Below, piece after piece: positions 9,922 to 49,751 of a DNA stretch of 64,000 nt. The notes under the pieces were generated by a model. The model made no database searches and was not told the origin of the DNA. It saw nothing but the letters and a program-made list of their open reading frames with translations. The stretch comes from Paragordius varius (taxonomy: Eukaryota; Animalia; Nematomorpha): NCBI GenBank assembly GCA_964247055.1, contig OZ176053.1, forward strand, positions 4,960,001 through 5,024,000. Direction: 5' to 3'. Within the stretch, counting starts at the first letter, position 1. Each line of letters opens with the position of its first letter. The position numbers and the translations under genes are program-made.

Positions 9922-10102
9922 CTCTAACTAAATGGGTAGATAAGATTTTTGCGGGTTATATATAAGGTGACCAGATTTTTTTAAGGAAAAAGCGGGAATA
10001 TGAGAAGGGGGTCGTTGGGGGGTACAACCAAAAATTTTTATACAAAAAATTTATTGTAATATTTATTTATTTTTAACACATCATTGTAAATATAAAAAAA
10101 TT

Positions 10103-10925: not shown

Positions 10926-10984
10926 TAAGTAATTTTGTTTATTTTTTAACACAAAAACTTTATAGAAAATATTTTATTCTTTGG

Positions 10985-12795: not shown

Positions 12796-13599
12796 ATTTA
12801 TAAACTACTATTAGTATAATAAATATTATATTACCTTAATTTTCTGGAAAAAACGTGTAAGGTACCGATTTGTGGTATCAATTTGTCTTTTAATCTAGTA
12901 ACTTGGCTTTTTGATAATAATGACAGTAGTAGTAGAGGAAGGAAAATGTATAATCATATGATATAATTCGAAAAAAATAAAAAATTTTAATTTAGAATAA
13001 AAAAATTTATTTGTATTAAAAAAATTTTTTTATATAATCGTGAAAAAGCGGGACATTTTAAAAACTTAGCGGGACGCGGGACAAAGTGTGAAAAGGGGGG
13101 ACTGTCCCGCCAAAAGCGGGACGTCTGGTCACCTTAGTTATATTCTAATATTTTGATTATAGCATCTTCTACAAAATGGATATATTTTAACATTAGCCAA
13201 TATTGACAAATCGAGTTATCATAATAAGCCAAAACATCAGCAGATATTATTCTATATTTTTTTGGGACATCCTGCTGAAAATCAATATTATTTCATCTTA
13301 ATTGGAATACCATTATGATAGACATATTCTTTAACAAGTGAAAAAGCGTCAGAACCTGAGCATAAATTCCAAAGAAAAAGGTATGAAATCCTTCTCATAA
13401 AATAAAATTCTATCACAAATTACTAAATTAAACGGCTTTGATTACTAAAAAAAATAAAGAGAAATCACCAAAAAATTTTAAATTATCATTTCTAAGCAAT
13501 AAAAAATTAATATTTCAGGTGCAATAAAAAACACGAGATTTCATGCGGCCCGTTAGCCGCGGTTTGAGTATCACTGGTTTACACAGTGCACATAGAAAA

Positions 13600-15370
13600 G
13601 TATCCTGAATATATATACCATTTCCCAGTCAATCGAAACATTTTCCCAATCAATCGAAACGTTTTCCCAGTCAATAAAAACGTTTTTCCAGTCAATCGAA
13701 ACATTTTCCCAGTCAATAAAAACATTTTCCCAATCAATAAAAACGTTTTCCCAGTCAATAAAAACGGGTTTATTTTTGATGATAAATATCAAAACAAGAT
13801 TTAAATATAACTTTTAACCATTATCAACGTAATATTGGGATAATAAAAAACACAATATTGAATAACATTTTTTCCTAATATATTCCAATGCACAATCAAT
13901 TAGGACTTATCCTTTAAAAGTTGTATTAAATTATCTGGATGATTATTTTTTGGTATTTGAGATACTTTTTAGAAAATTTCTAATATTTTATGGATAGTTC
14001 GCATTCTAACTTATAAAATCTATAGTGGCGGGTGAAAAATAAAATAAATATATACCATTTTATCTCAAAGGTATTTAACATTTTATATTGGATCTTAAAC
14101 ATATTTACCCTAATTTATATAATATTTATCATCTGGTCCAGCGGTGGCCAAACGCGGGCCTTCGAGATTCTTTGGGCAGCTCGCGAAAAATTTGCCCATA
14201 TGCAAAATCATGCCCACAAAATCTTAGTAAAATTCATATTCCTTACGCAATTGTTCTGAATGAGTCTATTAAATTGGCAACGAATTGAAAAAAATTGTTA
14301 CATTGTGTTTGTATTTTACAGTTTGTCTAAAATCGATGCGGAACGCCGTGTTTTTTAAAAAATTGCGTCCAGCGAAGCCATTTGGTTGGGCACCCCAGTT
14401 TTAATCAAATATCATTTTTCATTAAATATTTTTAAATCAAAACATTTTTATCATTAGAATATTTTTTGTTTAATTATTTTTTTCCGACAGTATTTTTATC
14501 CACAAACTTGACATGTTTAAAAACCAATTTGAAATCTTAAATGACCTTTGAGATAAAAATGGTATATTTTTTTATTTATTTTCCAACCGCAACTATAGAT
14601 TTTATAAATTAACCCAAATAATGCGAACCATCGATAAAATAAAAATTATTTTATACCATTTACAGTTCAAATTCACCCTTTAACAATTCAAATTTACCCT
14701 CAAACTATTCAAATTCACCCTTGAACAATTCAAATTCACCATCGAACAATTCAAATTCACCCTAAAAATAAATTATGTGTTTTCGAACTAATAAAACTCA
14801 TTATCAATATAAAATATATCTTTATGGCATAATATTATTTTTCAGTATTATTTAATTTAAAACAAAATTTTATTTTTTAATAATATATTGAAATATAGGT
14901 AATTTTTAATCTTAAAAAACATGTTATTTATTTGAGGGTGAATTTGAATTGTTCGAGGGTGAATTTGAATTGTTCAAGGGTGAATTTGAATTGAAGGGTG
15001 AATTTGAATTGTTTAATTCGAACTGTAAATGGTATATATTTTCTAAAAAATATCTCAAATTCCAAAAAATCATCATTCAGATAATTAAATATAACTTTTA
15101 AATAATATACGTCATTGTTGATTGTACATTGGAATATATTAGGAAAAAGTGTCGTTCAATAATTGTCCTTTTTTAAAAAAATAATATCCCAATATTACGC
15201 TAATAATGGTTATAACTTATTTTTATATCATGTTTTGATATTTAGCATCAAAAATAGAACCGTTTTTATTGAATGGGAAACATTTTTATTGATTGGGAAA
15301 AGTTTTTATTGACTGGGAAAATGTTTTTATTGCTTGGGAAAAATTTTCGATTGATTGGGAAATCGTATAG
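13600..15370. repeat. Foldback-like nested inverted repeats with two families of 21 bp tandem subrepeats
   Basis: 13600-13985 is the inverse of 15040-15370 (21 bp TTTTCCCAGTCAATCGAAACA, 7 and 5 copies); 13985-14090 is the inverse of 14530-14640; 14650-14790 is the inverse of 14910-15040 (21 bp CAATTCAAATTCACCCTTGAA, ~5 and ~4 copies). Confidence 0.8.
14139..14398. mobile_element. hAT (Charlie-like) MITE nested in the foldback
   Basis: Ends CAGCGGTGGCCAAAC and GTTGGGCACCCCAG resemble CAGGGGTGGCCAAC-type TIRs; flanks do not form a TSD. Confidence 0.6.
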
Positions 15371-24373: not shown

Positions 24374-27300
24374 TTAATGTGCATATAATTTTGGTAAAAT
24401 GTGTTGATTTTGCTTTTTGCGCTGCTCAGCCATCCATTCTCCAAATTTTCTAAGTTGTTCGTCGCGTTTTTTGTCCTGTATACGGAAATATATAAAATTA
24501 TTAAATATTAATAAATATATATTACATTAAATATATAAATTTCATAAAATATATTTACCAGAAAATTGATGTATAATGACGCCGGTATCCATATAAAAGT
24601 TGTGAGAACTATAATCGTTCCTACCAAGTTATCTGCCATCAATTTTTCTATAACAACAGTTTTTCATTAAAGGTTATAATATATATAATATAAAGGTTAG
24701 TAATATAATGTTTAGTATAAGCTAATTACTGAAATCATTGATATTGATATTTTCAACATATTGCCAAATCCGTTGAATTTTGTCCGTTAACTCTACTTCA
24801 CATTTTCCCTTAAAAAATAATAAATTTCGAATTTTATAGGTATATGAAATATCAAATTAGATAAAAAAGTACACCTAAATAATATAAATATATTTCCAAA
24901 AATACAGTCCAAACCTTTTTACTACAGTATCCATAATTACAAGGTTCTCCTTCATCCAAAACAATATATTGGGTTTGGGATGATTCTGATTGTATAAATG
25001 GTTGACATTCGGTTGTCTTTGTGCTCTTAATAGGTTTGCAGCAAAGGTAACATGATTTATCTGTAGGGGTTATGTGAGAATAAATATATAAACACCCATA
25101 AGCCATATTTATCCGCAACAAAAAAAATACCTTAGAAAAAAAATTACAAACCTTTCCATGTATTTCTGTATAAGGAAAAAGCATTCAATTATTCCCAGAG
25201 CTTAAATCAAATGGACCTTAAGACAAAAATTTATTAATATCTCATATAGAATCAATTCCTCTTTATGAAAATAGAGCCTCAATAGTACGCCCGATAAGAG
25301 ACACAGACTTTCAGACAAATACTCGCCTGCACCAAAGGTTTGTGCTTATATTTTTAGTCATTTTAATATTAGACTATACAAAAAACATTTCTATCAAACC
25401 GCCGTGTGAGTGTTTTTTGGGGTTTTTTTTAATCGACACCTTACTATATATAAATAAATTTATGAAAGAACTACCTCGAGAACCATGGATTAAAATTAAA
25501 TTTCAATAAGTTAGATATAATGTATCAGAATATTGTACATACGCCCCTAAATGCGCCATATGCGACAAAGAAGCCAAACCAAATTCAAAAAACACAATAA
25601 TACTAGCTCTACAAACTTTGTCTCGTCACTGGTACATTAATTGAAATAAATTTTAAATGCAACAACTGTAAAAATAATAATCCAACCTAATGCTCTAATC
25701 GACGACATTCCAACAGCAAAAGTAGACCACTTCATTTATCTTGGAGTCGTCCTAAAAGGTGATATCACTAATAAAAATACAAATTCAGCAAGCATGGGAA
25801 TAAGACACATAAAATTTGCCCTTAAACTATTGTCAATAATAAATGGTTAATACAAAACAGAAGTCAAGCCTGCTCTTACCTATACCACAGAAACATAACC
25901 CCTAAACTATCTTGCCAAAATCATTTATACTGATAATACAATATTCAAAGCTTGCTTTTCTGATAGCAATATTACAATTCAACACAAAAATGATACTGTA
26001 TAGAACGTTGAAAAAAGGAATAGACTCAAATATTTAAGTCAAGAGCGACGACTAACCGATAACCCAATCCAAACTATTAATCATATTCAACCGTTTGAAA
26101 ACAACACAAAGGACGCCCGATGCACACCTGAAACCCCAACATCGAACATGAAAATATGTGACAACTAAATGATGTTTTAAACATCTAATATTTATCGCTT
26201 TATTTCACAAAATAAATAAATTATCCGTAAGAATACTGTAATTTCAAATATAAAAGAGAAACAGCATGTAAAATAAAAGACTAATATGTATTTTTTATTA
26301 ATAAAACAACGTTTAATCGTTTTATCTATCTAATAAAATTATAGAAATCGTGATTGAGCGTGTAGTTACATTCCTATTCTTTATTCCTCGATCAATACAT
26401 AAGTTATATTAAAAATTAAGGAAAAATTTATTTATATAAAAAATATGAACTTTTGCTATATATGTTTTGTGATGATTGTACTAATTTATATTTTACTGTA
26501 ATTATTCTTGTCCTAGAAAACCAATTTATTTAACGCTAAAAAATTTTATATATACATTTAAAATATACCAATTTCCCTGCATATACACGGAGTTAGTCCA
26601 TGAGATTCACAATGTGAAATACATTTTCCAGAGCCATCACACATCCCCCGTGCTGAAAAAGTTTTGCAAAGGCTTGTTTGGTTTTCAAAATTAAAGAAAG
26701 TATTAAAAAAAGTTAGGGGAGATCCAACATCGTATACGAAAGATTGGCTTTTATTATAAAAAGCTTGAGCATATAGCAATCCTTTTGTTAAAGATAGCGA
26801 ATACTTGCCCACATATTGTTTTTCAAAGCCAGATTTTTTCAACACATCAACCAAATTTTGATTTGGATTATAATCGATGTAAAGGCTGTGTGGCATAACT
26901 TTTTCCACAGTAATACTGTTAGTGTTAGGACGAGAAGAAATTGTTTGATTTAGAGATACGAAATACAGGTAAATGATAGGACAATTTACATTTTTGCCAT
27001 TACAAGGTATGGGTGATGCTGTGAAACAGTCGAAATCCAAAGAATAAGGAGTAAAATCTAAAACACATTTGTTTTTATCACAAAATAAAAAAACAGCAAT
27101 AAAATAACATTTTTAAAAAATCAATTTTATCTTTTTATTATTTTAATTATTATGCTTGATGCAAAAAGTTACATAACTGGAAAGATATCAAAAACCGATT
27201 TAAACTATCAAGTTAACAACAAACATTAATATTTTATAAAAACTTGTAAATAAAAATACCCATGCTTTTGTCTTTTATACCAACTAAAGCTGAAAAAATT

Positions 27301-30300
27301 TGGGGTAGGCAAGTTTTATTTTGGTGAATAGTAGCCGGTTTACAATTAACACAACATTCCGAGATAGTATCATCACACATAGCTTCTTTTGCGTATTTGC
27401 ATTCTTGGGTACAACATTTAAATATTCCGCTAGGTGCTAAATTTATCAAAAAAGCATATAAGAAATGAAAAATTATATTTTACCAATATAACAAGAGGTA
27501 ATGATAAATATTAATCTTTAAATTATTTATGTAAAAAATGATCAATAGAGAAATTACAGTTTTTCATACTTATAGATTAATAACATTATAAGTAATACCT
27601 AACAAATTATAATTAATTGTTTGTAAACTTAAATTTTTGATACTTAAAAATTTTGCGAAAATTTACGGGCGTTTAAAATACCTGAATTGTAAAAATTCGT
27701 ATCCGAGGAAAAACCAGGATCACATTGCTCATTTTTGTCCAATATACCATTCCCGCACATATCTTCTAAATAAATTAACGTAAAGAATATAATACTGTCT
27801 TGGTATAAATAAAAAATCAAGAAAAAAGGTTTAATAAAATAATGTATATAAAGTAGAGAAATTAGCATTTTTAACTAGTTTAAATATAGATAATTGGCTT
27901 TAAATGCGATAAAATTATTAAAAAACTAATTTATGGAAAATGCCTATTAAAATAGTAATATATTATTTTCTTCCCTGCAAAATTTTTATATAATTAGGTT
28001 TATATATATAAATAGTAATTTTCTATAATCAAAAATAAAATAAATATGTCATGATTTTATACTATGTAAGAGTAAAAATATGCAAATACTATCTAGCTTA
28101 AAAAAATCAAAAATTACCTTTGTTATCTGGTTCGTGGTTTAAATCGTTTTGAGTAAAACAGAGATGGGATTTAGCCCTGAGCACAGAACCAATAGCTAAC
28201 CGTGAACTGGGTGAAAAGCGTTGATTGTTAGTTTCAAAGCCACGTAATGAATATGGATGCATGATATAACTCCCATACCTATTGGTATCTAAAAAAGTTA
28301 GCATTATATAGAGATTTATGAAAAAATGCATAAAATTTAGCTGTTTTAAAGTTTTACATTTTGGACTAATACATTCCCCGAGTCCTTATATTAACAATAT
28401 TTATTTTTATGAAAAAATAAATACCATAGATCGCATTTTTCGATATACTTACATTTGATAAATGTTAGCTAGGTAAACATTATGAAAATCCTTTCGCTTA
28501 TTAAATAAATTTTAGGATACAACGCAGGAAAAATTAGTCATTTCTAAGATGAATTTGATCTGTATAAATTTAGAAAATTTGGTTTTTAACTTTTATAGAC
28601 AATAGATTCTCAAATAAGTATTCATACAATAAATAAAAAAATAAATAAAACTAACCATCAAAAGAGGGAGCTTGATTAATGTTAGTCCGTTTTTTAAGCC
28701 AGGTTTTAGTGGATAAATCATGTTCGCTGCCCCAATTATGGCCGAGTTCATGAGCGGTTATAATATCGCCTTCTTGGGTAAAAACGGTTCTAAGAGCTTC
28801 ATTTTGATAAGAGCTAAATCCCGTGTTAAGCGATATAGGCACATGTGATAGGAAACGTGATCCATAAGTTTCTAAATAATATAATTGAGAGGTAGTTATA
28901 AATAAGAAAAATAGCACCTAAATAAAAACACTATTAACGTATATACAAAATTTTCGTTTAAGAATTAGGTGTGTATAATATTTTATAATCAACAAAGAAA
29001 CAAGCAAAATTAAATTTTTTATCATTGAATTTAGTAATAACCAAAACAAATATAATAAAATAATTCAAAATAAACATAAATCAATCAATTCATAACAAAA
29101 ATTATACTGCGCATAATGGGATAATTATATGGGTAAGTACAGACACCACCAGGCCGATGCATTTTATCTGATGCCACATAGGCCAAACCTAGTACATTTC
29201 CTTCAAATGGTTGATGGGTAAATAAATGAGCCAAGCATATATCGTCCTCCTATATATAAAAATTTAGTAAAAATTATTAGATAAATATTTTTTTTTGCAA
29301 AAAACAATCATACTTTTTTAATTCAATTTAAACTATATAATTGGAATTATGTATAAATAAGTGTGCCATTTACATCTCTATTTCTTATTAAGCGACCCAA
29401 AATAGGTTTATTTTGTCAAAAAAACGAGAAAAAATGGTTGTTGACTTTTAGAAAAAAAAATTTGACTTTAAATATTAACGTTTTGTCTGTATGATTTCAA
29501 TTTTTATTGTATGTCGCATCTAAATAAAATCAAATCCCATGCATTAATTTTCAAGGAAATAAAACAAACATCCTCAAGTTTTTATAGATTAATAGAAAAC
29601 CCATTAATAATTAAAACATTATTATATTTTAACGGGGTCCAGGAAATAAGAATCATGACCAAAATAAATGGATTTCATTTAAATTGTTATTTTTAAACCA
29701 ACCTTATTGGACATAACATAATATTTATGGGAGCTTTTTGATAAATTTATTAATTTTAAAAAAGGATTCATTTATCAAACAATTATGAAATTTATAATAT
29801 ATATCTATTTGCAATCACTATTTTAAACAGGAATACTTAAATAAAGATTATAATTTGAGTATAATTTAAATAATCAAGTTTGTTAACGTGTAGCCTTAAA
29901 AATAAAAAAAAATAATTAAATTACTTCAACTTTAGCGTCTTCATTTTTATATTTCCCAATTATTTTTGGGCGATAAAGTGTAAAGGACTCAAGAAATTTT
30001 CCCACGCTTGTCCATTTGGGAGAAGGGCCATTATAATGTTCCAAAGAAAATATGTCAGATTCTAAACAAATTTTGGTGTAATTTTTTATGTAATTGTAAA
30101 ATATCAATCAAAAATACATAAATAAAAATAATCAATAGAGGTAAAAACAAATTTAACATACAGTTTCAAAAAATGGAAATATATACTACTTACTTTCTAC
30201 CTTAAACTTAGCTATTTAGCCTTGTTTCCCTAATTTAAGACATTACATATTTATAAACAAAATAATAAAAGTAGCTTTAAAAATATATCTATAGGTATCA

Positions 30301-32289
30301 AAGCCAATTCTATTAAATTATTATAACTCGGATTCATAAATGTTTTATGAACCAGGTCACTTTATGTAAACATTCAAAAGAGGCAAAATAACCCTTACCT
30401 ATGACTTCATCAAACTCATGGGTTGGTCCATTATAAAAACGGAAAGAGTTATTAGATAATGGTAAATTATTGCTATTGATTGTAGGATGCGTATGAATCA
30501 AAATTTGCCGTATAATAAAACCAAAATTAGTTAGGTTTTGTCCATCTGGAGTTTCCCAAACGGTTGTAGTGTAAATGGCATTAATTCGACTAATAACACC
30601 AACCTAAAAGTCGAAAATATTATTAAAACTCGATTTGTAAATCTTATTTGTTAATATAAATTTCAATTTAAATTTTAATTAATTTAACTAAACCATATAT
30701 TTTTAATTGTCATTTGTTAAAACAAAAAATTAAGCTTCAATATGATAACTTACAATAATTGTTGTAAAAAAACATATATTAACAAACCCCTGTGAAAAAC
30801 GGATCAATTAAACTATGTAAAAACATTTATTATATTGCAATCCAATATATTATTTCGATACTTAGCCAATATGGCGTATATTTAGAATTAAAATATGAGA
30901 AAATACTAAATAATTTATGGTGTTTTGAATGCTGGATTTCCCAACCGCCTGAAAAAAACGCCAATCAGCAACAAGGAGTAGAGAACATCTTTTAGAAACG
31001 TTTGAATCGATCAAGTTTTGAGTTATAGCCCTTTTTTTCCTGGCTTTATTCTTTATACCTAAAAATTATTTTAAACTATGCTTGTAAAAAGGGTATAATT
31101 CATAAACTTATAATTAACTGATAAAAATAAGCATTTGACCGTTTTGCAGATATTCATAATATTAGAAGTTAAGTCATATATTTATAAACTTAAACATATC
31201 TTGCAACTAAATTAAAATTGAATTTGATAAACATTAATTAGGACATATTAATTATTCGGTAAAAATTTGATAAAAAATTAAAGTTAAACTAACTTATCAT
31301 TCATATAAAAACTTCGCCAAACAGTCATGGTAAAAAATGCATTCATAAACCGTCGAATCTCATAATAATTATATGGTCAAAAAAATAAACTAAACTTTTA
31401 TCAGCCATTTAGAATTAAATAAGATGTACCTTGAAATTATAAAATTATTTATTCTTTGATTCTCTATTTACCACAAATAAAAATATATCTATACCCATAT
31501 AATTTTTAACAAAATATATTTGATATTATCGCACACGAGTCTTAATAGAAATATATGTTTCACAATATCAAGAATGTTAAAGTGGTAATTAACTATAAAT
31601 TAAACTAAATAACGTGGAATTCGCCAAAGAAACCGCAAAAGATAAATACACATAATCATGACAATAAAAGTTAACAAATTTATATAACCAAAAAAGAATA
31701 CTTATGTTTTAAGTAAGCGCAAAAAAACAAGGGCCATCTATAGCGAATTATATATATACAATTAGAATAATTTTTCATTAATTATATGTGTAATGTAACT
31801 TATGTCTTATATTTGACTAATATAGTGATAAAATTATACTTTCACCATATTATTTAATAAATTATAGCGTAGTAAAAATAATTACAAACCTTTATTATAA
31901 CATGACATATATTTTGCTGTCTCCAAATTATTTAAATGCATCAAATAACAGTTTTCTGCTGTAGTTGTTAGACCAAACTCATTCGCATCAAAGGCGATCA
32001 AAACTGAGTTATTATGTATGCTATTAAATATATGGTAAGCTGGCTAAAATTTAAATTTAAAAACCTCGATGTAAATATTTAACTCTTTAATATAAGCATA
32101 TATTTCGTCATTATAGCGAGTCATTAAAAAAGTGTTATTTTCAATATTCCCTAATATTAAAATTAAAATACCAATATAAATTTCTGGCTTATATGACTCA
32201 TAATTATTATCAATCACCACCTTAAAATCTAAGGAAAGAATTTCATTATGGTATTTGAGATCAACATAATATTTGCTATATTTAATCAT
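24374..32289 (-). CDS. ADAM17: ADAM17/TACE-like disintegrin metalloprotease, multi-exon; 5' end uncertain
   Basis: Exons include 30399-30603 ([14 protein letters not shown]), ~29130-29247 ([20 protein letters not shown]), ~28657-28852 (zinc motif [12 protein letters not shown]), ~28117-28289 (Met-turn YIMHPYS), ~27690-27768 ([15 protein letters not shown]), ~27258-27430, 26569 to ~27057, 24915-25060 ([16 protein letters not shown]), 24730-24808, 24559-24647 (TM segment [18 protein letters not shown]) and 24374-24475 (DKK tail, stop). Prodomain-like exons at ~31900-32289; signal-peptide exon and the CxLxxxAD exon were not located. Confidence 0.92.
25690..25910 (+). mobile_element. Degenerate non-LTR retrotransposon (RTE-like) RT fragment in the 1508 nt ADAM17 intron (25061-26568)
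   Basis: Translations [16 protein letters not shown] and [15 protein letters not shown] match the VxxFxYLG and YxxxIxPxLxYxxE motifs at the RT C-terminus. Confidence 0.55.
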
Positions 32290-35287: not shown

Positions 35288-36452
35288 TCGTAAATAGCAT
35301 TAAGTTATTTAAATTTTAAATCGCCTTGGATAGTTAATATCGTCTTAACCAAATGATATTCCAAAATTTCGTTTTTATAAATTATTTGGCTTAATTACAT
35401 TTAAATTATAAATATTTTTGTATTTTACTTTAATTTTTAGTGAAAATTCATTTCTCATATCAGGCTTTGAACGAATTAAAACATGTTGTTGTAATATAAA
35501 TTAAGGGGGAGCATGTAAAGTATGGATGTCCAACAAAAATGGCTTCGTAGGCCGTATTAGAATATATATGGGCATTCATAACAAATTTATTACATTTCAA
35601 ACACAAAACTGGAAAATGCAAACACAATATAGCAATTTTTTCTAGTTCTTGCCAATTGGGTAGACTTATTTAAAAAATTGTTTAGGATATCTCAATTTAA
35701 TAAAGATTTTATAAACATATTTTTTTATGGATGTTCATTTTTTTTGCGTGCCGCACATAATAGGAGGACTGCATGTGGGTCACCCCCAATACAAAGTCTC
35801 TAGTTGTTAAACAGTTTGTCATCCAAACCTCCATAATGGGAATAGATTTTATAAAGAATTTTAATTATTGTAGACAGTTTTTGATAAATGGCGACGCCTA
35901 ATACACAAACTTATATTCTTTTCTATTTTACCAATGTCTATTGAATGGCAAAGTTTAGTCAATTGCTTCATAAATCAAATGGACAAAAATTCTTTTCTAA
36001 CAGCCTACTGCTTATTCAGTAAGTTTTCATCTCTATACGCATCTGATCCCCAAATTTTAGCCGATTCTAAAAGCTCGTGAGTTTCATTATGCAAAAATAA
36101 GAAAAACTACATTATTATTCCCCAAGAAATTCCGCGTATGAGGTGCCCGAAGTATGATGACTTTTGTTTAGTAATTTATAAAACCAATAATTATCAAAAA
36201 TTGCTATCAAAATATGAAACTAATTTAAATTTTATTTGTTAGCAATTTGACAATATATATTGTGAGTTCACATCTTTACAAGTATCTAGTATGATGCGCA
36301 AACAATGAATGTATATTTTTTAATTTGGTTTAATATCATTGTTACTCTTAAAGATTTATCTCTGAAATGGCCCTGGAATAGGAGCTACCCCAAAAGGTAT
36401 GAAGTGGCATGTTTTATTCAAAAGTATAGCATGATATTTATTTGACTTATGT

Positions 36453-38577
36453 CAGTGGCGTACCGAGCATTTGCGGCGCCCGGGGCATAAAACTGTAATG
36501 GCGCCCCCTCCTATTTTGAAAGCCAATAAAACAATTTAGTAAAAAAAATATTAACGTTTTTAAATGCTTCATTAAAATCAATTTTAGGATTTTGCAATCT
36601 ATGTCGAACCCTACCTATTCTTATAAGTATTTGATGGTAGAAAATATGTTAAAAATTGAAAAAACACTTTGAAGTAAAATGGATGCCTCACTTCTCTTGT
36701 TTCATTAGTATTTGAAATATTTTTACTTAAATCTCCTAATAGATCTATTAAATCATCTATTCCTATAACAATGGTAATTGAATTCTAGCACTCCATCGGG
36801 CTTCAAACTCACGCTTAACAGTTTTTTAGTTTATTTTTCAATAGGTCTCATATAATAGTTGAAAAAAAGATGGATATTTTCAATTATTCCGAAACAGGTC
36901 ACAATAATAACATCTTGTTTTACTACCGTGACTCCTACCAAATTCAAAGAATAAGTGTCACAATTGACAAATATTGCTCTTTTATTTTTCCAGAATTCTT
37001 TGTTGAACGCCTGAAATGTGACCTGACATCACAGCTGCATTATTATATCATTGAGAACTACAATTTGATAATTGAATATTATCCATACTTAAATTTTCTA
37101 AAATTACCTTTTAAATTGACATTGCATTTGTTGTATAACTGAAAAAAACCCAAAAAGGATTCCTTATGACAACTCTCTTTTTCTCATAATCAATACACCT
37201 ACCTGGCAACTTAAGAAATTTGTTCTCGGTGGGCTATATCTGGCGTTAGATCAAACATAAGTCTATAATATTTACCTTTTTTATGTCATTGATCAATTTA
37301 GCTTTAACTCTTCAAGCTATAAGATGTATAAACTCGTTTTGGATTTTGGATGAAACACAGGATATTAGGAGATTCAATGTTTTACATGTGTTCTCCCATT
37401 ATTGGGTCAAACCGAGCTGCATGTTTTAGTAAAGATAAGATTCCAGGATTTGGTACTGAGTCATTTAGATACATTAAACTTGCAGCATGTCCTCGAAAAG
37501 GGAGGTTTTGGTTGATTAGAAATTTCATGCAGGCCAATATTCGATGTAATAAGATCGATCAAAAAGTAGGCAATAACCATACGCAGATCTGTTCTTTGGT
37601 GAATATAAAAACCAAGACCTCTCAACTTCAAATCCTTCTTTTTTACCGAAACACGTCGAAAAAATCAAGATTGGGGCATTGAACGATGATTTTTTGTTTC
37701 AAAGAGATAGCAATCATTTTGAGATACTTGAGGTTCACGAAGAATTATTTCTGTGTGAAGCTTAATAGATATTACGGGAGAAACACTATTATTAGAAAAA
37801 GGCGACATCATTAAACTCTATAGATAGCGCTTGGAATTAATAATGGTATATTTGTAGTTTTCCTATATATTGGATCAATAACTAGGGTTTCAGGTGTATT
37901 AATGTTTTTATGTAGGGGTGCTGTTATATTTGTGTCTCATACACCTTTCAATGTTAGGGTCAGATATTTTAGTTAAATAAGATTTCATACTCATTCGCAT
38001 TTTATTTGTTTTATTCCCTTCATGGGTTTACCGTTTTTTATTTGCATAACCGCTGAGTTTAGGCATTGATATCTGATGAAAATGAAAGTATTTATAAAAA
38101 ATACAAGGCTATATTAATAATAAAAGCTACCCTCTTAGAGATGGAATGATCTTGTTAAATAAATAAAAGTAGGTTTCGAAATTGAATATGTATAAAATAA
38201 AAATGCAATTATAAATTATGAGAATAAGAGATAAGGTTTTTTGAACAGAGCGAGAAGTTGAGATAATTTAATTAAAGGCAATAAAAGAATTAACAATAGT
38301 AAGTGCGTGATAAAGAAATGTTTTTTAAGCGAAAAAATAAGTTTGCACTGGTTGAAGGGAATAATGAAAGTTGTTTATTGCATAATGTTTGATCCTAATT
38401 TCATTTATATATTTAATATAGAAATTACCTAAGTTGCTGAAAAATCTTACTTGAAAGTTGTTTTTATTTTTGCATAATTTAAATTTAATTTAAAAAAATC
38501 ATTTAGGCGCCCCCAAATAACGGCGCCCGGGGCATGATGCACCCCCTTGCCCCCCCCCCCCCATCGGTACGCCACTG
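36453..38577 (-). mobile_element. hAT element with decayed ZMYM1/DUF4371-type transposase
   Basis: Perfect 14 bp TIR CAGTGGCGTACCGA/TCGGTACGCCACTG with GGCGCCC subterminal repeats. Minus-strand remnant from ATG at 38066 (MPKLSGYANKKR*) includes QNLPFRGH, IQNEFIHLI, MFDLTPDIAHREQIS, ESFLGFF, YNAAVMSGHISGVQQRI and NCDTYSLNLVG. Confidence 0.9.
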
Positions 38578-40494
38578 TTTCGCTTTAAAAATTACCCAAT
38601 TTTTTTGAATTTTGCTTTTTAATTGAAGGTGGTAGATTAGCAAGACTGATTGGTACTCTTAAAGCTAAAGAACTCATATTCGCCGGTTCTATTATTGAGG
38701 GACAATTCCGAACAGTTTGGTTTAGTCAATCTATCCACTAAAATTGACGACACACCTTCGAAACGTTTTTGATTCAAACTAACTTAAACTTTTGTACGCT
38801 ATTTTTAATAGGGGTTTGCACCCACGAAAATGATGATGCTTATTTTGGAGGCGGTTAAATAATCCGATTAAAAGGAAAATGTTTTTAATTTTTCCCAATT
38901 TTTACCTAATTCTTTATTAATCGAATTCCTTTGTTTTGGTATATACTATATACAGTAAAAATTGAAATTATCAAAAAGAAAGACAAATATATTTTTAAAA
39001 TACAATCATTTTCAAATCTCAATTTTTTTAAATTATAGCTCATTGTTTAAATTTGCAAAGTATGGAACAGAGATATATATTGGTAACATAATCAATTAAA
39101 TATTTAACGACTGTGAATAAATAATTTATAAAAGATTGAGATCAAAAGTATGGTCGTCTTTTAATTAAAAAATATTTGTAATTCTATTTTTATGTTTTGT
39201 CCGCGTAATTTCAGTTTTTACTGTACCTGTTTATCCATAATTGAAACTTCTTGACATTTAAGTTATTGGAATATGTTAATCAAATGGGACCACATCTTAA
39301 GGTCATAAATAATAATTTGGAACCGGAAATGAAAAATAGTGAAAATGTTAAGAGCTATATCCGACAAGATTACTAATTTTTAAATCATTTTTTTATAGAT
39401 ATAGCTCATTTATCATAATAGAGAACAGTTCAGAGGAAATTAGGCTGTCTTCTTGGCTTGCAAAAAAGCCCAGGAATTAGCAACTCAAATTTTGCAAAAT
39501 TTCTATAATAAATTTAATATTATTTAGGTAATTGATTCAAACGACATATTGGAAGGCTTAAAAGACCGAAAAAAGGATATCTATTTTTAAAGGGAATTCA
39601 TTAATTCAACATGTTTTATTTAATAAATTTTATTATCAGTTAGTTTTATTGGATAAAAAAACGTGATGAATAAATGTCCCATAAAATCATTCAATGTATA
39701 ATGAGTGACTTTTATGGCCTATACGCACAGAGTATATTATATGTTATTAGCGAAATTTTAATGATTCTACTTCTGGCAATCTATTGTGTTAAATTTAAAA
39801 AAATTATTTCTCGTTTGATGTCCTTACAAACACTAATGAAACATATCTCGATCACAAGCCTTTAATTGTTATGTTGATTTGGATTAACTAATAGGCCTAT
39901 GATAATTCCTTATAAAACTTATGTGTAATGAGTATATAAAATTTATTTATTATTTAAAATTCATACGTCTGCCAAATTTATTTTATTATTCTGAATATCA
40001 TATGTTATGACATGTAAATCAGTGTTATAGCCAATTTAATGAAATAGAATATTTAATTGTCATGTAAATAGACCCCTATAGTAAACATTTCTTAAAATTG
40101 AGCTATCATAAGTTATTATCTTTGATACAAGGTAATATTTTGAGATATTTAATTTTTATTAATATTTGTGAGTGAAATTTAGAGTAATTCATTAAAGAAC
40201 ATGTAAAAATTATGAAAAAAATCAACCGTATATTTTGTCGATTTTTTCAAAAGATATGTAAATTAATATACCTCAATTATATAATTTTTGGAATTATATA
40301 ATTTATGTAGGAAATATCTAGATAATAAAAAGTATTTTTCTTTCTGTAAAAAATTGTCTTTAGTTCAAACATTTTGCCTATATATTTTTGATCGAGTGAA
40401 CAAATTGTTTAAAAATTGAGTTTCTATAATTTGAGCAACAATCATTTTATTATATCTAATGTTTTTTTAATTTTAACGCGATAAATCACAGACC

Positions 40495-43400
40495 TTACAC
40501 CTATCCATCCTAATACTGATAAGTGGCGGCTTCGGTGACCGATGGATGTGGAAAACAATAATGGGATAAAATAGACAGTTGCATCAATTTAGTCGAGTCT
40601 AACATTAAACCGTCCGGCAAATCTGTTACGAATAAGCTCTCAGCCAAAATAACCGACATTTTACACTGCATCTATCCTAATACTGAAAAGTGGCAGTTTC
40701 GGTGAGGGATGGATGTAAAACACAAATGGGAAATCTAATAAGACAGTTGCATCAAGTTGGTCAAGTCTTACATTAAACCGTCCGGCAAAAGCTGTTTCGA
40801 TTTAGTACTCAGCCAACCCACATTTTACACTCTATCTATCCTAATACTGAAAAGTGGCAGTTTCGGTGACGGATGGATGTAAAACACAAAAATGGGATAA
40901 TCTAATACAGTTGCATCAAGTTGGCCAAGTCATACATTAAACCGTCCGGCAAAAGCTGTTTCGAATTAGTTCTCAACCAAATCAACCCACATTTTACACT
41001 CTATCCATCCTAATAACTAAAAGTGGCGGCTTCGGTGACGGATGGATGTAAAACACAAAAATGGGATAATCTAATGAGACAGTGGCATCAAGTTGGCCAA
41101 GTCATACATTAAACCGTCCGGCAAAATCTGTTTCAAATTAGTTCTCAGCCAAAATTACCCACATTTTACACTCTATCTATCCTAATACTGAAAAGTGGCA
41201 GTTTCGGTGACGGATGGATGTAAAACACAAAAATGGGAAATATAATAAGACAGTTGCATAAAGTTGGCCAAATTACACATTAAACCGTCCGGCAAAATTT
41301 GTTTCGAATTAGTTCTCAACCAAAATAACCCACATTTTACACTCTATTCATCCAAATAACTAAAAGTGGCGGCTTCGGTGACGGATGGATGTAAAACACA
41401 AAAATGGGATAATCTAATGAGACAGTGGCATCAAGTTGGCCAAGTCATACATTAAACCGTCCGGCAAAATCTGTTTCGAATGAGTTCTCAGCCAAAATAA
41501 CCCACATTTTACACTCTATCTATCCATAACTAAAAAGTGGCAGTTTTGGTGACGGATGGATGTAAAACACAAATGGGAAATCTAATAAGACAGTTGCACC
41601 AAGTTGGCCAAGTCATACATTAAACCGTCCGGCAAAATCTGTTTTGAATTAGTTTTCAGCCAAATTAACCCACATTTTACACTCTATCTATCCTAATACT
41701 GAAAAGTGGCAGTTTCGGTGACGGATGGATGTAAAACACAAAAATGGGATAATCTAATGAGACAGTGGCATCAGGTTGGCCAAGTCATACATTAAACCGT
41801 CCGGCAAAATATGTTTTGAATTAGTTCTCAGCCAAAATAACCCACATTTTACACTCTATCTATCCTAATACTGAAAAGTGGCAGTTTCGGTGACGGATGG
41901 ATGTAAAACACAAAAATGGGATAATCTTATACAGTTGCATCAAGTTGACCAAGTCATACATCAAACCGTCCGGCAAAATCTGTTTCGAATTAGTTCTCAG
42001 CCAAAATAACCCACATTTCACACTCTATCTATCCTATTACTGAAAAGTGGCAGTTTCGGTGACGGATGTGTAAAACACAAATGGGAAATCTAATAAGACA
42101 GTTGCATCAAGTTGGCCAAGTCATACATTAAACTGTCCGGCAAAATCTGTTTTGAATTAGTTGTCAGCCAAAATAACCCACATTTTACACTCTATCTATC
42201 CTAATACTGAAAAGTGGCAGTTTCGGTGACGGATGGATGTAAAACACAAAAATGGGATAATCTAATGAGACAGTGGCATCAAGTTGGCCAAGTCATACAT
42301 TAAACCGTCCGGCAAAATCTGTTTCGAATTAGTTTTCAGCCAAAATAACCCCCACATTTTACACTCTATTCATCCTAATAACTAAAAGTGGCGGCTTCGG
42401 TGACGGATGGATGTAAAACACAAAAATGGGATAATCTAATGAGACAGTGGCATCAAGTTGGCCAAGTCATACATTAAACCGTCCGGCAAAATCTGTTTTG
42501 AATTAGTTCTCAGCCAAAATAACCCACATTTTACACTCTATCTATCCTAATATTGAAAAGTGGCAGTTTCGGTGACGGATGGATGTAAAACACAAAAATG
42601 GGATAATCTAATACAGTTGCATCAAGTTGGCCAAGTCATACATTAAACCGTCCGGCAAAAGCTGTTTCGATTTAGTACTCAGCCAACCCACATTTTACAC
42701 TCTATCTATCCTAATAACTAAAAGTGGCGGCTTCGGTGACGGATGGATGTAAAACACAAAAATGGGATAATCTAATGAGACAGTTGCATCAAGTTGGCCA
42801 AGTCATACATTAAACCGTCCGGAAAAATCTGTTTCGAATTAGTTCTCAGCCAAAATAACCCACATTTTACACTCTATCTATCCTAATACTGAAAAGTGGC
42901 AGTTTCGGTGACGGATGGATGAAAAACACAAAAATGGGATAATCTAATGAGACAGTTGCATCAAGTTGGCCAAATTACACATTAAACCGTCCGGCAAAAT
43001 TTGTTTCGAATTAGTTCTCAACCAAAATAACCCACATTTTACACTCTATCCATCCTAATAACTAAAAGTGGCGGCTTCGGTGACGGATGGATGTGAAACA
43101 CAAAAATGGGATAATCTAATGAGACAGTTGCATCAAGTTGGCCAAATTAGACATTAAACCGTCCGGCAAAATTTGTTTCGAATTAGTTCTCAACCAAAAT
43201 AACCCACATTTTACACTCTATCCATCCTAATACTGAAAAGTGGCAGTTTTGGTGACGGATGGATGTAAAACACAAAAATGGGATAATCTAATGAGACAGT
43301 GGCATCAAGTTGGCCAAGTCATACATTAAACCGTCCGGCAAAATCTGTTTTGAATTAGTTCTCAGCCAAAATAACCCACATTTTACACTCTATCTATCCT

Positions 43401-44784
43401 AATATTGAAAAGTGGCAGTTTCGGTGACGGATGGATGTAAAACACAAAAATGGGATAATCTAATACAGTTGCATCAAGTTGGCCAAGTCATACATCAAAC
43501 CGTCCGGCAAAATTTGTTTCGAATTAGTTCTCAACCAAAATAACCCACATTTTACACTCTATCCATCCTAATACTAAAAAGTGGCAGTTTCGGTGACGGA
43601 TGGATGTAAAACACAAAAATGGGATAATCTAATGAGACAGTGGCATCAAGTTGGCCAAGTCATACATTAAACCGTCCGGCAAAATCTGTTTTGAATTAGT
43701 TCTCAGCCAAAATAACCCACATTTTACACTCTATCTATCCTAATACTGAAAAGTGGCAGTTTCGGTGACGGATGGATGTAAAACACAAAAATGGGATAAT
43801 CTAATGAGACAGTTGCATCAAGTTGGCCAAATTACACATTAAACCGTCCATCAAAATTTGTTTCAAATCAGTTCTCAGCCAAAATAACCCACATTTTACA
43901 CTCTATCTATCCTAATACTGAAAAGTGGCAGTTTCGGTGACGGATGGATGTAAAACACAAAAATGGGATCTAATGAGACAGTTGCATCAAGTTGGCCAAA
44001 TTACACATTAAACCGTCCGGCAAAATTTGTTTCGAATTAGTTCTCAACCAAAATAACCCACATTTTACACTCTATCTATCCTAATACTGAAAAGTGGCAG
44101 TTTCGGTGACGGATGGATGTAAAACACAAAAATAGGATAATCTAATGAGACAGTGGCATCAAGTTGTCCAAGTCATACATTAAACCGTCCGGCAAAATCT
44201 GTTTTGAATTAGTTCTCAGCCAAAATAACCCACATTTTACACTCTATCTATCCTAATACTGAAAAGTGGCAGTTTCGGTGACGGATGGATGTAAAACACA
44301 AAAATGGGATAATCTAATGAGACAGTTGCATCAAGTTGGCCAAATTACACATTAAACCGTCCGGCAAAATTTGTTTCAAATCAGTTCTCAGCCAAAATAA
44401 CCCACATTTTACACTCTATCTATCCTAATACTGAAAAGTGGCAGTTTCGGTGACGGATGGATGTAAAACACAAAAATGGGATCTAATGAGACAGTTGCAT
44501 CAAGTTGGCCAAATTACACATTAAACCGTCCGGCAAAATTTGTTTCGAATTAGTTCTCAACCAAAATAACCCACATTTTACACTCTATCTATCCTAATAC
44601 TGAAAAGTGGCAGTTTCGGTGACTGATGGATGTAAAACACAAAAATAGGATAATCTAATGAGACAGTGGCATCAAGTTGGCCAAGTCATACATTAAACCG
44701 TCCGGCAAAATCTGTTTTGAATTAGTTCTCAGCCAACCCACATTTTACACTCTATCTATCCTAATAACTAAAAGTGGCGGCTTC
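40495..44784. repeat. Tandem satellite array, ~25 monomers of ~172 bp
   Basis: Monomer CTATCTATCCTAATACTGAAAAGTGGCAGTTTCGGTGACGGATGGATGTAAAACACAAAAATGGGATAATCTAATGAGACAG...AACCCACATTTTACACT; period 172 bp (e.g. 42365 to 42537). The first monomer is the most diverged. Confidence 0.99.
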
Positions 44785-45382
44785 AGCATTACATCAGAAA
44801 CATCATATGCTATAACACATTTTTTTACACTTATCTCACAATTGTTTTGTAACAATACACTTATTAACAAAAAAATTGTCGTTATAGGCAATATATTTAA
44901 TTAATGTTTTATTATCTATATTTAACCCAAAAATAGGGTCACTATATCATACAAAAATAATAAATTTAAATCATATATAATATAGAGATGATTTTCGTGT
45001 CTTGTGAAAAAAAAATTGAAGAAAAGAGCGATTTCGTATACTCCTAATTTTTTTAAAACATACATTTTAAACCAAATTAAAAGTTATTGGCAAGATTTAT
45101 TTAAAAAATTAAAACTTCTATCATTTGTGTTTATTTCCAACTCTATATATTTCTAAAAATTATAATTATACAGACAAAACGTAATAAGTAAACGCAAATA
45201 TTTTGTTTATAAAATAAATCAGATTTTCTGAACCAGGGGTGTCCAACATCTTCTTGAACATCATATTCGACCCGCGAAATTTGTAAAATTATACTTAAAA
45301 AATCTTATTGTGTAAACAAATATTCTGAATAAGTTTATCCAAAAGGCAACGATGAAGAAATTAAATAATTACGAATCCCCAC

Positions 45383-45667
45383 CAATGGCGTACCGAGCAT
45401 TTGCGGCGCCCGGGTCATAAAACTTTTATGGCGCCCCCCCTTTTTTTTAAAGCCAATAAAACAATTTAGTAAAAAAAATAAACGTACTTAGGTCAATAAT
45501 AGAGTATATATTTTAGACTACCTAAATTGCTGAAAAATCTCATTTGAAAGTTCTTATTATTTTTGCATAATTAAAATATAATTTTAAAAAATCATTTAGG
45601 CGCCCCTAAAAAACGGAGCCCGGGACATGATGCACCCCCTTGCCCCCTCCCCCTCGGTATGCCCCTG
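45383..45667 (-). mobile_element. hAT MITE, internal-deletion derivative of 36453-38577 in the same orientation
   Basis: Begins CAATGGCGTACCGAGCATTTGCGGCGCCCGG, ends TCGGTATGCCCCTG; consists of the two terminal ~110-180 bp segments of the larger element. Confidence 0.9.
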
Positions 45668-45844
45668 ACTTATGTAAAGATAAATTTAACAACCACTAAT
45701 ATTTCTTTATAATTTCATAATTCTACTTGGAACAAATGGAGTCATAAACCTAACATTAAATATTGCAAAAACTTTATATTATGAAAGCCTAAAAAATTTC
45801 TATTATATAGATATATATATCCTTTATTGATTACACATATATAA

Positions 45845-46023: not shown

Positions 46024-49000
46024 TTAAAAATAAATAAGTTTTCCACAATGGCTAAACGGGTAATCCTGGTTACTGTCCTTAACTAGTTGGCCTCTTGGAA
46101 GGCACAACCAGGGGTCATACGTAAAGTTTTGCCATAACTGAAGTTTGTGCTTCAACCTGTGAAATGTGCGATTCAGATTGGCATCTTTATCACTCAACTC
46201 AAAGGCTTCTGGCTTGGCTTCGAATTTAGGGTGATACAAATTATTTCTATCATAATATTAAAATAAATAAAACTTTCTGATTTAAAACCAATTTGTCAAG
46301 TGTATTATGAAAATAAAGTATTTTAAATATAGAGATTTTATACAAAAATAGAATTAATATAATATCGTATAAATATTTTACAATTCAAGCGGATCCTGAT
46401 ATAGATCATAAAATTCCCATTCAGGACGAAAATAATATTGTCTTAATGTCAAATTGTTCCATTCGAGGGAACGTCCTGCCAATGTTCTACAAAAATATAC
46501 ATGTTTTATAAGAACAAAAAATGAGTGCGCGATAATGCAAAATAGCAATACCTGTTTAAGATATCTTGATATGTAGGGGATACATACAGATTTGAATCGA
46601 TTGGAAAAGGCGTCAGATGATTCAGATTATGAATCACTTTCATTTGCGACGCCATTTCGATGATCGATCTCATCGGATAGTATCCCGTAATTTCATGAAG
46701 GCTGGCGCTACCAAAAATATTGTTGGCCAATAAATGGTAGAACCGATGCCTACGATTTGCCAAAGGCAAATCCGGAAACATAACGGCAGGCGTTATGTTT
46801 AAGGATTGTGCCTTATGGTATAAATTTAAGGGGTTTAGTTGGTATGGGTAGGTAATATCAATATTCCGAGCCAGCTCAGCTGTCCAGGTACCATCGAAAG
46901 GACCGGTCATCATGAAAAACATTCGGATTGAATAGTATAGGGAATCAGACAAACTCGAATAGAAAGTGACTCGTTGTGGCCTCCTAACATTCTTATATGC
47001 TGTTAAATTACCAATTGAATCTAAAATATCTTGACCATTGGGAAACAAAGCAACGGCAACGTTTTCATTTCGATGATCACTATGTGTGGGCGATGGTTGA
47101 GGATTTGCTAAAGATTCTAAACTGTTGGAAATAACTATTTCATCATTAAAGTTAACATTTTTGTTCGTTGAATTTTTATATAAAACAGTTTTGGTGAAAT
47201 TGTCCAAATGATTGGGATTGATAGGATAGAACATTGAAAGTACGAAAGGAATTCTAACACCCAAATCGTAGAGATTTGTCCGACCTCGCGGAAAAGCCAC
47301 GCCATTGTCCGACATGTACATTACGCTACTCAAAGAATATCTCATGAGATGTTTCATTTCTCGTACCACCATACCAATCCCTACAAAAGCACATATTAAA
47401 ATTCAACACTTATAATAGGACAATAAAGATAGATTCCATAAAATTATCTCAAATATTATTCGTTTTACAATAGCTCCATAGCCTACTACCGAAAGTAACC
47501 TGTCAAAAGTAAATGTGTAGCAATAAGTATATATCAGGACCTAATAGCCTTACAAAAATATTAATAGTATAAATGCCGTATCTAGTTATATTTATGACTT
47601 ATTCATGAAATATTATTTAGTTTAAATTCTGTAAATATAAATATTTTTGTTTGTGAAATAGTATTTAAAATATCCACCTGGTAAATTATTTTTAATATTG
47701 ATAATCAAATACTTAAAATAATACATCAAGTGGTCTAGACAGCAACCTATACAAAAATTGTTTGATTAGGAATATTAGATATTTATGTAAATTAAGCTTA
47801 TTAAAAAATACCTTTCATATTTTAGTAAAATAAACGATATTAAATATTTTTACCTTTTATTATAAAATAATGTATTATAATATTCGTGTTCCCACGTTAA
47901 AACTCTTTAAGACAACAATAAGTGTCCTTATAAACCTGGAGATTAAATTTGAGGTGAAAAACATTCATAAAATTGTTATAATATAAAAAAATTTGATAAA
48001 AATCTATCTGACAATTTTATTATTAGGTATCTTATTAGAAGAATTATATTACATTTCTTATATCGATTAACACAATGAGGTCACCAAATCATGCCGAGCA
48101 CAAATAAAATAAGATAGAAAATATATGAATAGGAAATATTAAGCTGAGGCAGCATTGAAACAGTTATTAACAAAATAAATTATATTTTATAAAATATATT
48201 TTATATTTTTCATCTATAACTTAAATTATTAGAGACGCCAGTATTGTGAAAAAAATAATATAAAAGGGTCCTCAAATTATGTTTTAATAAGATTTTTTCA
48301 ATAATCAGTTAATCGTACTTGGAGGCGTCTTTTGTATATTAATTTATACTTTTTATTTTAATAATATGAATTATCAAGGCGACTACGGTAGTTAAGGTAA
48401 CGAATGTATAAAATAATCTTAAAAAATAATAAGTATTATATTTAAATACGTATAATGAATTGGATTACGTTTTATTTTCGTATATAATTGGGGTCGCCAG
48501 ATGGCATGATTTTAATTACAATAAATTAGAAAATAGATAGGCATACTAACATATTAATAGATTATTATTGAAAAACGATGTCAAATATTAAATAAAACTC
48601 AAGTTGATATATTAGTAATCAAGTTTACAATCTAGGTATCAAAATAGTAAACGTCTTTTAAAAACAAAATTGTGCATCTTAATTAAATTTTTAAGTAAAT
48701 GTTACCAGAATCTAGGCGACTTATAGTTTTGTACTGAGCGGCCAATTCCATCCGTGTCGTTGAAGTATCAGGGTAATAAGGTTCAACACTCTTGATTTTG
48801 TTGGCATCGTACTCTAAAGGCGTCCAATCAGGAATAGAATTTGAATTGGCGGAAATGGTAAAGTGTGTTTCGTTTCGATCCATGCCTAATAACAACTTAT
48901 CTTTACCATAAACACTCTTTAGAATAGATTCAATATTAAGGTTGCTGATTGGAACACTGATAGGTTTTCCATCTCCGAAACGTTCGCAATAAGGCCCATA

Positions 49001-49751
49001 TATTGGCATTAAGTTTTGATGGCACCGATGGGGATCTTGAAATGAAACAATAAGCAGGAAACTTCCATTAACTTCACTAATACCATTTTTCCTAAAAATA
49101 AGATAATGGTATATATTTTGGGGTAAAAATAAAATTTATTTTTGTAAACAAACTTTTTATAATCCTCAAATGCATTTCTAAACTTCCACAATTCATGCTT
49201 CATGAAGGTGGTGTTGCGGCCAATTTGCATAGAAGGATAGGTGTTATCTGTTGATTCAAAATGAAACCGAAACGATTCATCAGTCCCTACGTGTTTAGTA
49301 CCAATCAATCCTATTATAAGAATTTTGTATAACCTGTAAATATTTTGGTATTTTGCGCTAAATCATTGGATATAGAGGTGACGTCCAGACAGTTAAAATT
49401 ATGAACACCATTGTGTAAACCATACATTCCGTTTTGATGTTGAGGAAGGGCGGTGTAAAATGTCGCTCTGTATATTAATAAGAAAAGAGTAAACCTGCTC
49501 GAACTACAACTTGGTGAACTTGTGTAAGCTTTCATATAAACACCTCCATCCTGCATAATATATTGGAGGTGTGGCATTTTACAATAAGGATGGTCATATA
49601 ATTCTGATTCAAAACCGGCATCATCACCTAAAAAAGTTATAAAAACCATACCAATGATGATTATTGCATTAAAAGCAAAACCCAAATCTAAAAGCGCTAA
49701 AAAATTCAAAAAGTATAGCATTTGGTACCGAATTGTGAAAAATATAAACAT
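46024..49751 (-). CDS. SGSH: N-sulphoglucosamine sulphohydrolase (sulfamidase)
   Basis: Exons 49652-49751 (start at 49751 or 49721), 49495-49627, 49334-49467, 49154-49310, 48706-49091, 46552-47380, 46382-46486, 46024-46246; all introns GT-AG. Motifs GDDAGFE, LPQHQNGMYGLH, DPHRC, IPDWTP, SDNGVAFPRGRTNLY, HEITGYYPMRS, PIDSNLYVSPTYQD and DPWLCLPRG. Confidence 0.96.

What the first reader, a model, noticed from the sequence alone, without database searches (positions are those of the whole stretch)
36445..45675. 9.2 kb composite hAT unit (element + satellite cargo + MITE) bounded by a single 8 bp TSD
Seen: ACTTATGT immediately precedes the TIR at 36453 and ACTTATGT immediately follows the TIR at 45667. 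The inner flanks (TTTCGCTT after 38577, ATCCCCAC before 45383) match neither each other nor the outer ones, so neither element has its own TSD. The two elements are direct copies, so the outer termini are one left end and one right end. Established: hAT transposases create 8 bp TSDs. Inference: the whole block, including 6.8 kb of cargo with the ~25-mer satellite, arrived as one unit. Either it macro-transposed like a bacterial composite transposon, or a circle carrying an element copy recombined into a resident element; both predict this flank pattern. This would be a route for moving satellite arrays around a genome.
Basis: partly seen in the sequence, partly recalled or inferred. Interest (0 to 1): 0.85.

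Follow-up and report, generated by a model that had tools for sequence, protein, structure and literature searches.

The report
Two hAT transposons moved a gene fragment
Two related cut-and-paste transposons that had landed on either side of a broken gene piece and a tandem repeat most likely jumped together as one 9-kb block, a mechanism shown in maize and seen here as an old natural event in an animal genome.

Summary
ACTTATGT flanks both outer ends (chance about 1e-4 per pair; the family makes 8-bp TSDs). Element A (2,125 bp) is a decayed hAT with a DUF4371-type transposase remnant; B (285 bp) is its MITE. The 6.8-kb cargo is not unique. It is an internal slice of a segmental-duplication family: the 3' exons of an AUH-like enoyl-CoA hydratase pseudogene plus 25 x 172-bp repeats. 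Its closest sisters on C6 (5-9% diverged) run through both cargo ends without hAT and hold each inner 8-mer once. So the inner 8-mers are old insertion sites of A and B in a donor copy. Best reading: Ac-type macrotransposition (about 0.72). Recombination into a resident element is less likely (about 0.17), because neither element looks chimeric. No donor footprint or empty site was found. Contig depths suggest both haplotypes in two samples carry the cargo. The satellite-transport claim fits one array: 19 others have no family end within 1.5 kb. The mechanism is known; this is a good natural animal example. The scan noted a similar Tc1-like composite elsewhere in this genome (unchecked).

The parts
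36445..36452 (.). Left copy of the 8-bp target-site duplication ACTTATGT
36453..38577 (-). Element A: internally deleted hAT, 2,125 bp, perfect 14-bp TIRs. Strand is given by the transposase sense, so 38577 is its 5' end and 36453 its 3' end. More than a dozen near-full-length relatives in the genome; closest is C8:3867113-3869214 (92%).
36565..37799 (-). Decayed hAT transposase remnant (many stops and frameshifts). Matches DUF4371-type transposases; no match to their C-terminal dimerisation part.
   Evidence: an overlapping family copy at C5:5.121-5.123 Mb has an 838-aa open frame with PF05699
38578..38585 (.). Inner 8-mer TTTCGCTT: remaining half of A's original target site; present once and uninterrupted in the C6 sister
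38578..45382 (+). Cargo, 6,805 bp: internal slice of a segmental-duplication family (AUH-like gene 3' part, spacer, satellite, downstream flank)
38629..38769 (+). Pseudo-exon of an AUH-like enoyl-CoA hydratase (6-bp deletion shared with the C6 sister, plus a frameshift); end approximate
38940..39225 (.). Small high-copy interspersed repeat inside the cargo, also present in the sister copies
39444..39501 (+). Degenerate AUH-like exon piece, followed at 39501/39502 by a window-specific deletion of about 320 bp that removes the next exon
39528..39597 (+). Last AUH-like exon, frameshifted
40495..44778 (+). Tandem array of 25.2 x 172-bp units (164-174 bp; mean pairwise difference 6%)
45375..45382 (.). 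Inner 8-mer ATCCCCAC: remaining half of B's original target site; present once and uninterrupted in C6 and C3 sisters
45383..45667 (-). Element B: 285-bp MITE of the same family (about 100 bp shorter than the common 380-400-bp form), 9 substitutions in 245 terminal positions from the MITE consensus; same orientation as A
45668..45675 (.). Right copy of the target-site duplication ACTTATGT

Best explanation
Footprint of one hAT macrotransposition. Step 1 (shown): the genome has a family of duplicated blocks carrying an AUH-like gene and a downstream 172-bp array; the window cargo belongs to a pseudogenised branch with two sisters on C6. Step 2 (inferred from the inner 8-mers): during the activity of this DUF4371-type hAT family, a 2.1-kb deletion derivative inserted at TTTCGCTT and a MITE inserted at ATCCCCAC, 6.8 kb apart and in the same orientation, in one copy of that branch. 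Step 3 (inferred from the outer TSD): transposase from an autonomous copy paired the two outer ends (A's 3' end, B's 5' end), cut out the 9.2-kb block and inserted it at ACTTATGT on C4, about 350 bp beyond the last exon of an SGSH-like gene. Step 4 (inferred): the donor haplotype was repaired or lost; the block then decayed in place. It is most likely a dead passenger: no intact gene is inside and no further jump is seen.
For: Perfect outer 8-mer, chance about 1e-4 per pair. The family makes 8-bp TSDs and is hAT. Cargo homology to sisters starts and stops exactly at the inner TIR ends, while the sisters continue more than 1.5 kb beyond and hold each inner 8-mer once. There is no microhomology at the inner junctions. 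The left 750-bp flank is unique, and neither flank matches the duplication family's own flanks. A is not visibly chimeric: both ends best match C8:3867113-3869214 at 95%. B carries none of A's 10 right-end variants. Ages are compatible: B about 3.7% from consensus, cargo branch about 0.03 per site. The outer ends are one 5' and one 3' terminus, as in Ac macrotransposons (PMC9910405; PMC3260210).
Against: No donor locus with A or B, no excision footprint and no empty target site was found in the assembly (only the best 40 candidates are scored). The composite is single-copy, so repeat mobility is not shown. The family's first ~55 bp and last few bp carry no subfamily-diagnostic sites, so recombination there cannot be excluded. 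Public contigs reach only 27-28 nt into the left TIR, the A/cargo junction is not among the listed pieces, and the right junctions were not tested.
Confidence: 0.72

Rival explanations
1. Homology-driven capture. A resident element with the ACTTATGT TSD took up 'A inner end - cargo - B inner end' from the donor, either by integration of an excised circle or by gap repair or gene conversion on the donor template.
For: Predicts the same four flanks. Gap filling is the usual origin of single-copy Pack-TIRs in animals (PMC8277862). The block is single-copy. The termini are too alike to exclude short crossovers.
Against: It needs the same doubly inserted donor plus a third element and two exchanges. 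The outer ends should then come from one element, but A's left end is closest to a 2.1-kb copy and B's right end is pure MITE type. Exchanges would be confined to about 55 bp at a terminus. Pack-TIR gap filling gives internal breakpoints with microhomology and two TIRs, not four intact TIRs.
Confidence: 0.17
2. Other alternative-transposition product, such as a re-replication 'composite insertion', in which A's side and B's side came from different sister copies and were joined inside the satellite array.
For: Known for Ac (PMC9910405). The array could hide a join. The left cargo part is slightly closer to C6b and the right part to C6a.
Against: The distances are small and compare unequal stretches, and the tree is star-like. 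Cargo order is colinear with single sisters. It adds steps without explaining more.
Confidence: 0.06
3. Coincidence or misassembly: the cargo reached this site by ordinary segmental duplication, A and B lost their own TSDs through flanking deletions, and the outer match is chance; or the assembly is misjoined through the repeats.
For: hAT elements cause adjacent deletions (own knowledge). No long-read span was seen here.
Against: Expected chance cases are about 1e-3 genome-wide. The outer flanks show no homology to the duplication family. A and B share only 100-135 bp at about 90%. Cargo contigs at 98-100% identity, with allelic variants absent from C6, lie at about flank depth in two samples.
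Confidence: 0.05

Closest known systems
Maize Ac/Ds macrotransposons (Huang & Dooner 2008; Wang et al. 2022; as described in PMC9910405 and PMC3260210)
   Same: hAT superfamily; two linked elements in direct orientation; outer 5' and 3' ends used; intervening host DNA carried; one 8-bp TSD around the block.
   Different: The maize cases were caught genetically with an active Ac. Here it is an old natural insertion in an animal, both elements are non-autonomous and DUF4371-type, and movement is inferred from sequence only.
Pack-TIRs of animals (Tan et al. 2021, PMC8277862: 370 cases, 208 of them hAT)
   Same: A host gene fragment with introns lies between hAT ends under one TSD; single copy.
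   Different: Pack-TIRs are one element with a filler, mostly made by gap filling with microhomology. This unit has two complete elements, four TIRs, junctions exactly at TIR ends and 6.8 kb of cargo.
Ising TE of Drosophila melanogaster (foldback-flanked composite; cited in PMC6431247)
   Same: Animal composite unit: host DNA moved between two DNA transposons.
   Different: Foldback elements, hundreds of kb, repeated moves observed in laboratory stocks.
Compound Ds-l4-483 of maize B73 (PMC3260210)
   Same: Natural ~7-kb hAT compound with trapped host DNA between two element copies.
   Different: There the first element keeps its own TSD and the second is a truncated duplicate. Here neither element has its own TSD and they belong to different subfamilies.
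hAT Tip family (BuT2, Tip100; PMC3942097)
   Same: Short TIRs, 8-bp TSD, transposase with DUF4371 plus PF05699.
   Different: No phylogeny was built here, so placement in the Tip family rests on domain content only.

Membership tests
hAT superfamily | Short TIRs (10-25 bp) | tested here: met
   14-bp TIR: 14/14 in A, 12/14 for the outer pair
hAT superfamily | 8-bp TSD | tested here: met
   14 of 22 family copies perfect, 19 of 22 with at most one mismatch
hAT superfamily | hAT transposase (PF05699 dimerisation domain) in the family | tested here: met
   A's remnant matches P0009, which has DUF4371 and PF05699. An 838-aa frame with PF05699 overlaps an A-family copy on C5 (coordinates only, sequence not seen).
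hAT Tip family | Clades with Tip100/BuT2 in a transposase tree | not tested
   Only the DUF4371 + PF05699 architecture, as in BuT2
Ac-type macrotransposon | Two elements of one family, close and in direct orientation; outer ends are one 5' and one 3' terminus | tested here: met
Ac-type macrotransposon | One TSD around the whole block, none around the single elements | tested here: met
Ac-type macrotransposon | Intervening DNA comes from another locus and is cut exactly at the inner element ends | tested here: met
Ac-type macrotransposon | Donor excision footprint or empty target site | tested here: inconclusive
   None found in the assembly or in the listed contig rows; the searches score only the best 40 candidates
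Ac-type macrotransposon | Transposase-dependent excision and reinsertion of the block | not testable with these tools
   Needs an excision assay or a second insertion with another TSD; none seen
Pack-TIR (gap-filling type) | One element interrupted by a filler, with microhomology at internal breakpoints | tested here: not met
   Two complete elements; junctions at TIR ends without microhomology (definition)

The most novel reading that the evidence does not exclude
In this compact, TIR-element-rich animal genome, composite (macro-)transposition by pairs of non-autonomous elements recurs across superfamilies (this hAT case plus unverified Tc1-like and hAT cases noted elsewhere by the scan) and accounts for a measurable share of dispersed gene and satellite duplications, including larger unseen units around the other AUH-satellite copies.
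Probability: 0.2. Interest if true: 0.68.

Novelty: new member of a known kind. Interest (0 to 1): 0.42.

Why it matters
Macrotransposition by paired hAT ends has mostly been shown in maize stocks. In the papers I could search, animal cargo capture by TIR elements is mainly explained by gap filling. This locus is an unusually legible natural record in an animal: the outer TSD, both old target half-sites and insertion-free sister copies are all present. It shows that two non-autonomous elements can most likely relocate kilobases of host DNA, including a tandem array and gene exons, to another contig. It also gives a simple genome-wide signature to count such events. The cargo is a pseudogene fragment and one event is seen, so no functional consequence is shown.

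Tried and rejected
Cargo as a transposon of its own: rejected, because sisters continue past both ends and their downstream homology stops at different points. Paralogous empty site: the left flank is unique, and a small old repeat at 36291-36406 gave no convincing alignment across the junction. Donor half-sites or footprint: none found. Second composite copy with another TSD: none. Pfam on A's stop-free pieces gave nothing; the family was shown through homologues instead. The TGTA variant in A's left end proved private, so it cannot serve as a subfamily marker. A is unrelated to the other hAT at 9963-13136 (different TIR, no tblastn match). Huang & Dooner 2008 and Wang 2022 were not held and are cited through PMC9910405 and PMC3260210. 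The single read-laying run was kept under 6,000 letters and covered only the left half. The broken transposase was searched piece by piece by reference, not joined.
Full report
OBSERVATION. The flank pattern is as described. ACTTATGT lies at 36445-36452 and 45668-45675, directly against the outer TIRs. The inner flanks TTTCGCTT and ATCCCCAC match neither each other nor the outer 8-mer. Elements A (36453-38577) and B (45383-45667) are direct copies sharing about 98 and 135 bp of their ends, and they hold the only four ends of this family in the window. The satellite is 25.2 copies of a 172-bp unit at 40495-44778. Two random flanks share an 8-mer with probability 0.8-1.1e-4. With some 430 family candidates in 110.6 Mb, about 8 direct pairs within 10 kb are expected, so about 1e-3 chance cases in the genome. 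The match is real.

THE ELEMENTS. The family has a 14-bp TIR and makes 8-bp TSDs: of 22 MITE copies with both ends, 14 are perfect and 19 have at most one mismatch. A has more than a dozen near-full-length relatives, the closest at C8:3867113-3869214 (92%). Its minus strand is a decayed transposase. One stop-free piece finds DUF4371 proteins, among them P0009 with DUF4371 and the hAT dimerisation domain, and these align along 36565-37799. The best PF05699 hit in the genome lies in an 838-aa open frame at C5:5.123 Mb that overlaps an A-family match on the expected strand. This is a candidate autonomous partner, seen as coordinates only. The domain content resembles the Tip group (PMC3942097), but I built no tree. 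By transposase sense the outer termini are A's 3' end and B's 5' end. B is a 285-bp MITE, about 100 bp shorter than the common form.

THE CARGO. It begins with an exon of an enoyl-CoA hydratase. The family's upstream exon scores PF00378, and its best solved relative is AU-binding protein/methylglutaconyl-CoA hydratase, AUH. Nine copies on C1, C4, C5, C6 and C8 have that upstream exon. The window holds only the 3' exons, with frameshifts, a 6-bp deletion shared with a C6 sister and a private deletion of about 320 bp. The array follows about 0.9 kb after the last exon, as in the other copies. The two closest sisters, at C6:3.97-3.98 Mb and C6:4.00-4.01 Mb, differ by 5-9% and form a star with the window copy; the other copies are about 19-26% away.

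KEY RESULT. Homology to the sisters starts at 38578 and ends at 45381/45382, exactly at the inner TIR ends. The family's copies continue for more than 1.5 kb on each side. The sisters carry TTTCGCTT and ATCCCCAC once, without any hAT. There is no microhomology between element ends and the displaced sister sequence, and the window's outer flanks show no homology to the family's flanks. The inner 8-mers are therefore best read as the surviving halves of the target sites that A and B made in a donor copy, and the outer 8-mer as the target of a later single insertion.

MECHANISM. Macrotransposition and recombination into a resident element both predict these flanks. They differ in chimerism: under recombination, A's left end and B's right end come from one element. 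Both ends of A best match the same C8 copy at 95%, while B's left end matches at 91% and B's right end is not in the top 40. B is MITE-consensus type at both ends (9 differences in 245) and has none of A's 10 right-end variants. Exchanges would have to fall in roughly the first 55 bp or the last few bases, where there are no diagnostic sites, so the rival is weakened but not excluded. Ages agree with one burst: B about 3.7% from consensus, cargo branch about 0.03. I put macrotransposition at 0.72, homology-driven capture at 0.17, a re-replication-type composite at 0.06, and chance or misjoin at 0.05. Shown: TSD, family identity, origin and cut points of the cargo. Inferred: the doubly inserted donor, the transposase-driven jump, and loss of the donor.

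WHAT WAS NOT FOUND. No donor half-site, excision footprint, empty target site or second composite copy (each search scores 40 candidates). In four public runs (two samples, one study), contigs join the left flank to the first 27-28 nt of the TIR, just under the tool's 31-nt bridging rule. Cargo contigs are 98-100% identical to the window. Variants at 38762, 38814, 38826, 39247 and 39776 are absent from the C6 sisters, and at 38826 the two alleles sum to about the flank depth. This suggests one locus carried on both haplotypes in both samples, with no near-identical donor; contig depth is a weak measure.

SATELLITE CLAIM. Nineteen other loci carry the array. None has an end of this hAT family within 1.5 kb downstream, and none of 10 cargo starts has one within 1.5 kb upstream. 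The array spread mainly with the AUH-like duplication block, by a route not identified here, and the hAT jump accounts for one copy. Larger mobile units beyond my 1.5-kb view are not excluded.

COMPARISON AND VERDICT. The unit meets the sequence-level features of an Ac-type macrotransposon: 10- and 28-kb units excise and reinsert with 8-bp TSDs (PMC9910405), and up to 100 kb has been moved (PMC3260210). It is not a standard Pack-TIR (PMC8277862). An animal precedent with foldback ends is the Ising TE (PMC6431247). My literature searches found no natural animal hAT case, but the library is incomplete. The host is not established. Earlier scan notes call it a probable horsehair worm; I did not test this, and one comparative paper gives 200-300 Mb for the species it studied, against 110.6 Mb here. 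An earlier follow-up (s1-324150) reports a Tc1-like composite in this genome, also unchecked. Verdict: a real and well-documented new member of a known kind; single event, dead cargo; interest 0.42.

Noticed in passing
G000 C1:15.20 Mb, C4:29-41 kb, C5:13.52 Mb, C6:8.27 and 10.07 Mb, C8:35-194 kb (L006-L020, L059-L070): At least nine AUH-like gene copies with mostly open exons, several near contig starts, each followed by a related satellite array. In some (L018, L019, L065, L070) the period is about 114 bp instead of 172.
   Followed up: partly
G000 C5:5120800-5123320: 838-aa open frame with PF05699 overlapping an A-family copy: candidate autonomous element of this family; sequence not seen.
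   Followed up: partly
G000 C3:4.17, 4.41, 4.45, 7.94 Mb; C6:5.56 Mb (L054-L058): Interstitial copies of satellite plus right flank, 10-15% from the window copy, with different downstream end points and no family TIR nearby; how they moved is unknown.
   Followed up: partly
window 39501/39502: Window-specific deletion of about 320 bp that removes one AUH-like exon present in the C6 sisters.
   Followed up: yes
window 46030-49751 (-): Sulfatase (SGSH-like) gene whose last exon ends about 350 bp to the right of the block, so the insertion may lie in or just after its 3' UTR.
   Followed up: partly
window 24855-30603 (-): Exons of an ADAM10/17-like metalloprotease (HELGHNWG zinc motif, disintegrin-like cysteines), with a weak sulfatase-like piece at 26561-27040 among them.
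   Followed up: no
window 9963-13136: A second, unrelated hAT (different TIR); a related transposase fragment lies downstream of an AUH-family copy in L064.
   Followed up: partly
window 38940-39225 and 45154-45231: Two small interspersed repeats inside the cargo, shared with sister copies and so older than the jump.
   Followed up: no
window 13621-15362: Several 21-bp tandem arrays in inverted arrangement, typical of subterminal repeats of a TIR element.
   Followed up: no
L032, L039, L050: Longer (1.2-1.4 kb) members of the same hAT family with their own TSDs; L039 and L050 share an inserted sequence, and L032 retains part of A's interior.
   Followed up: no
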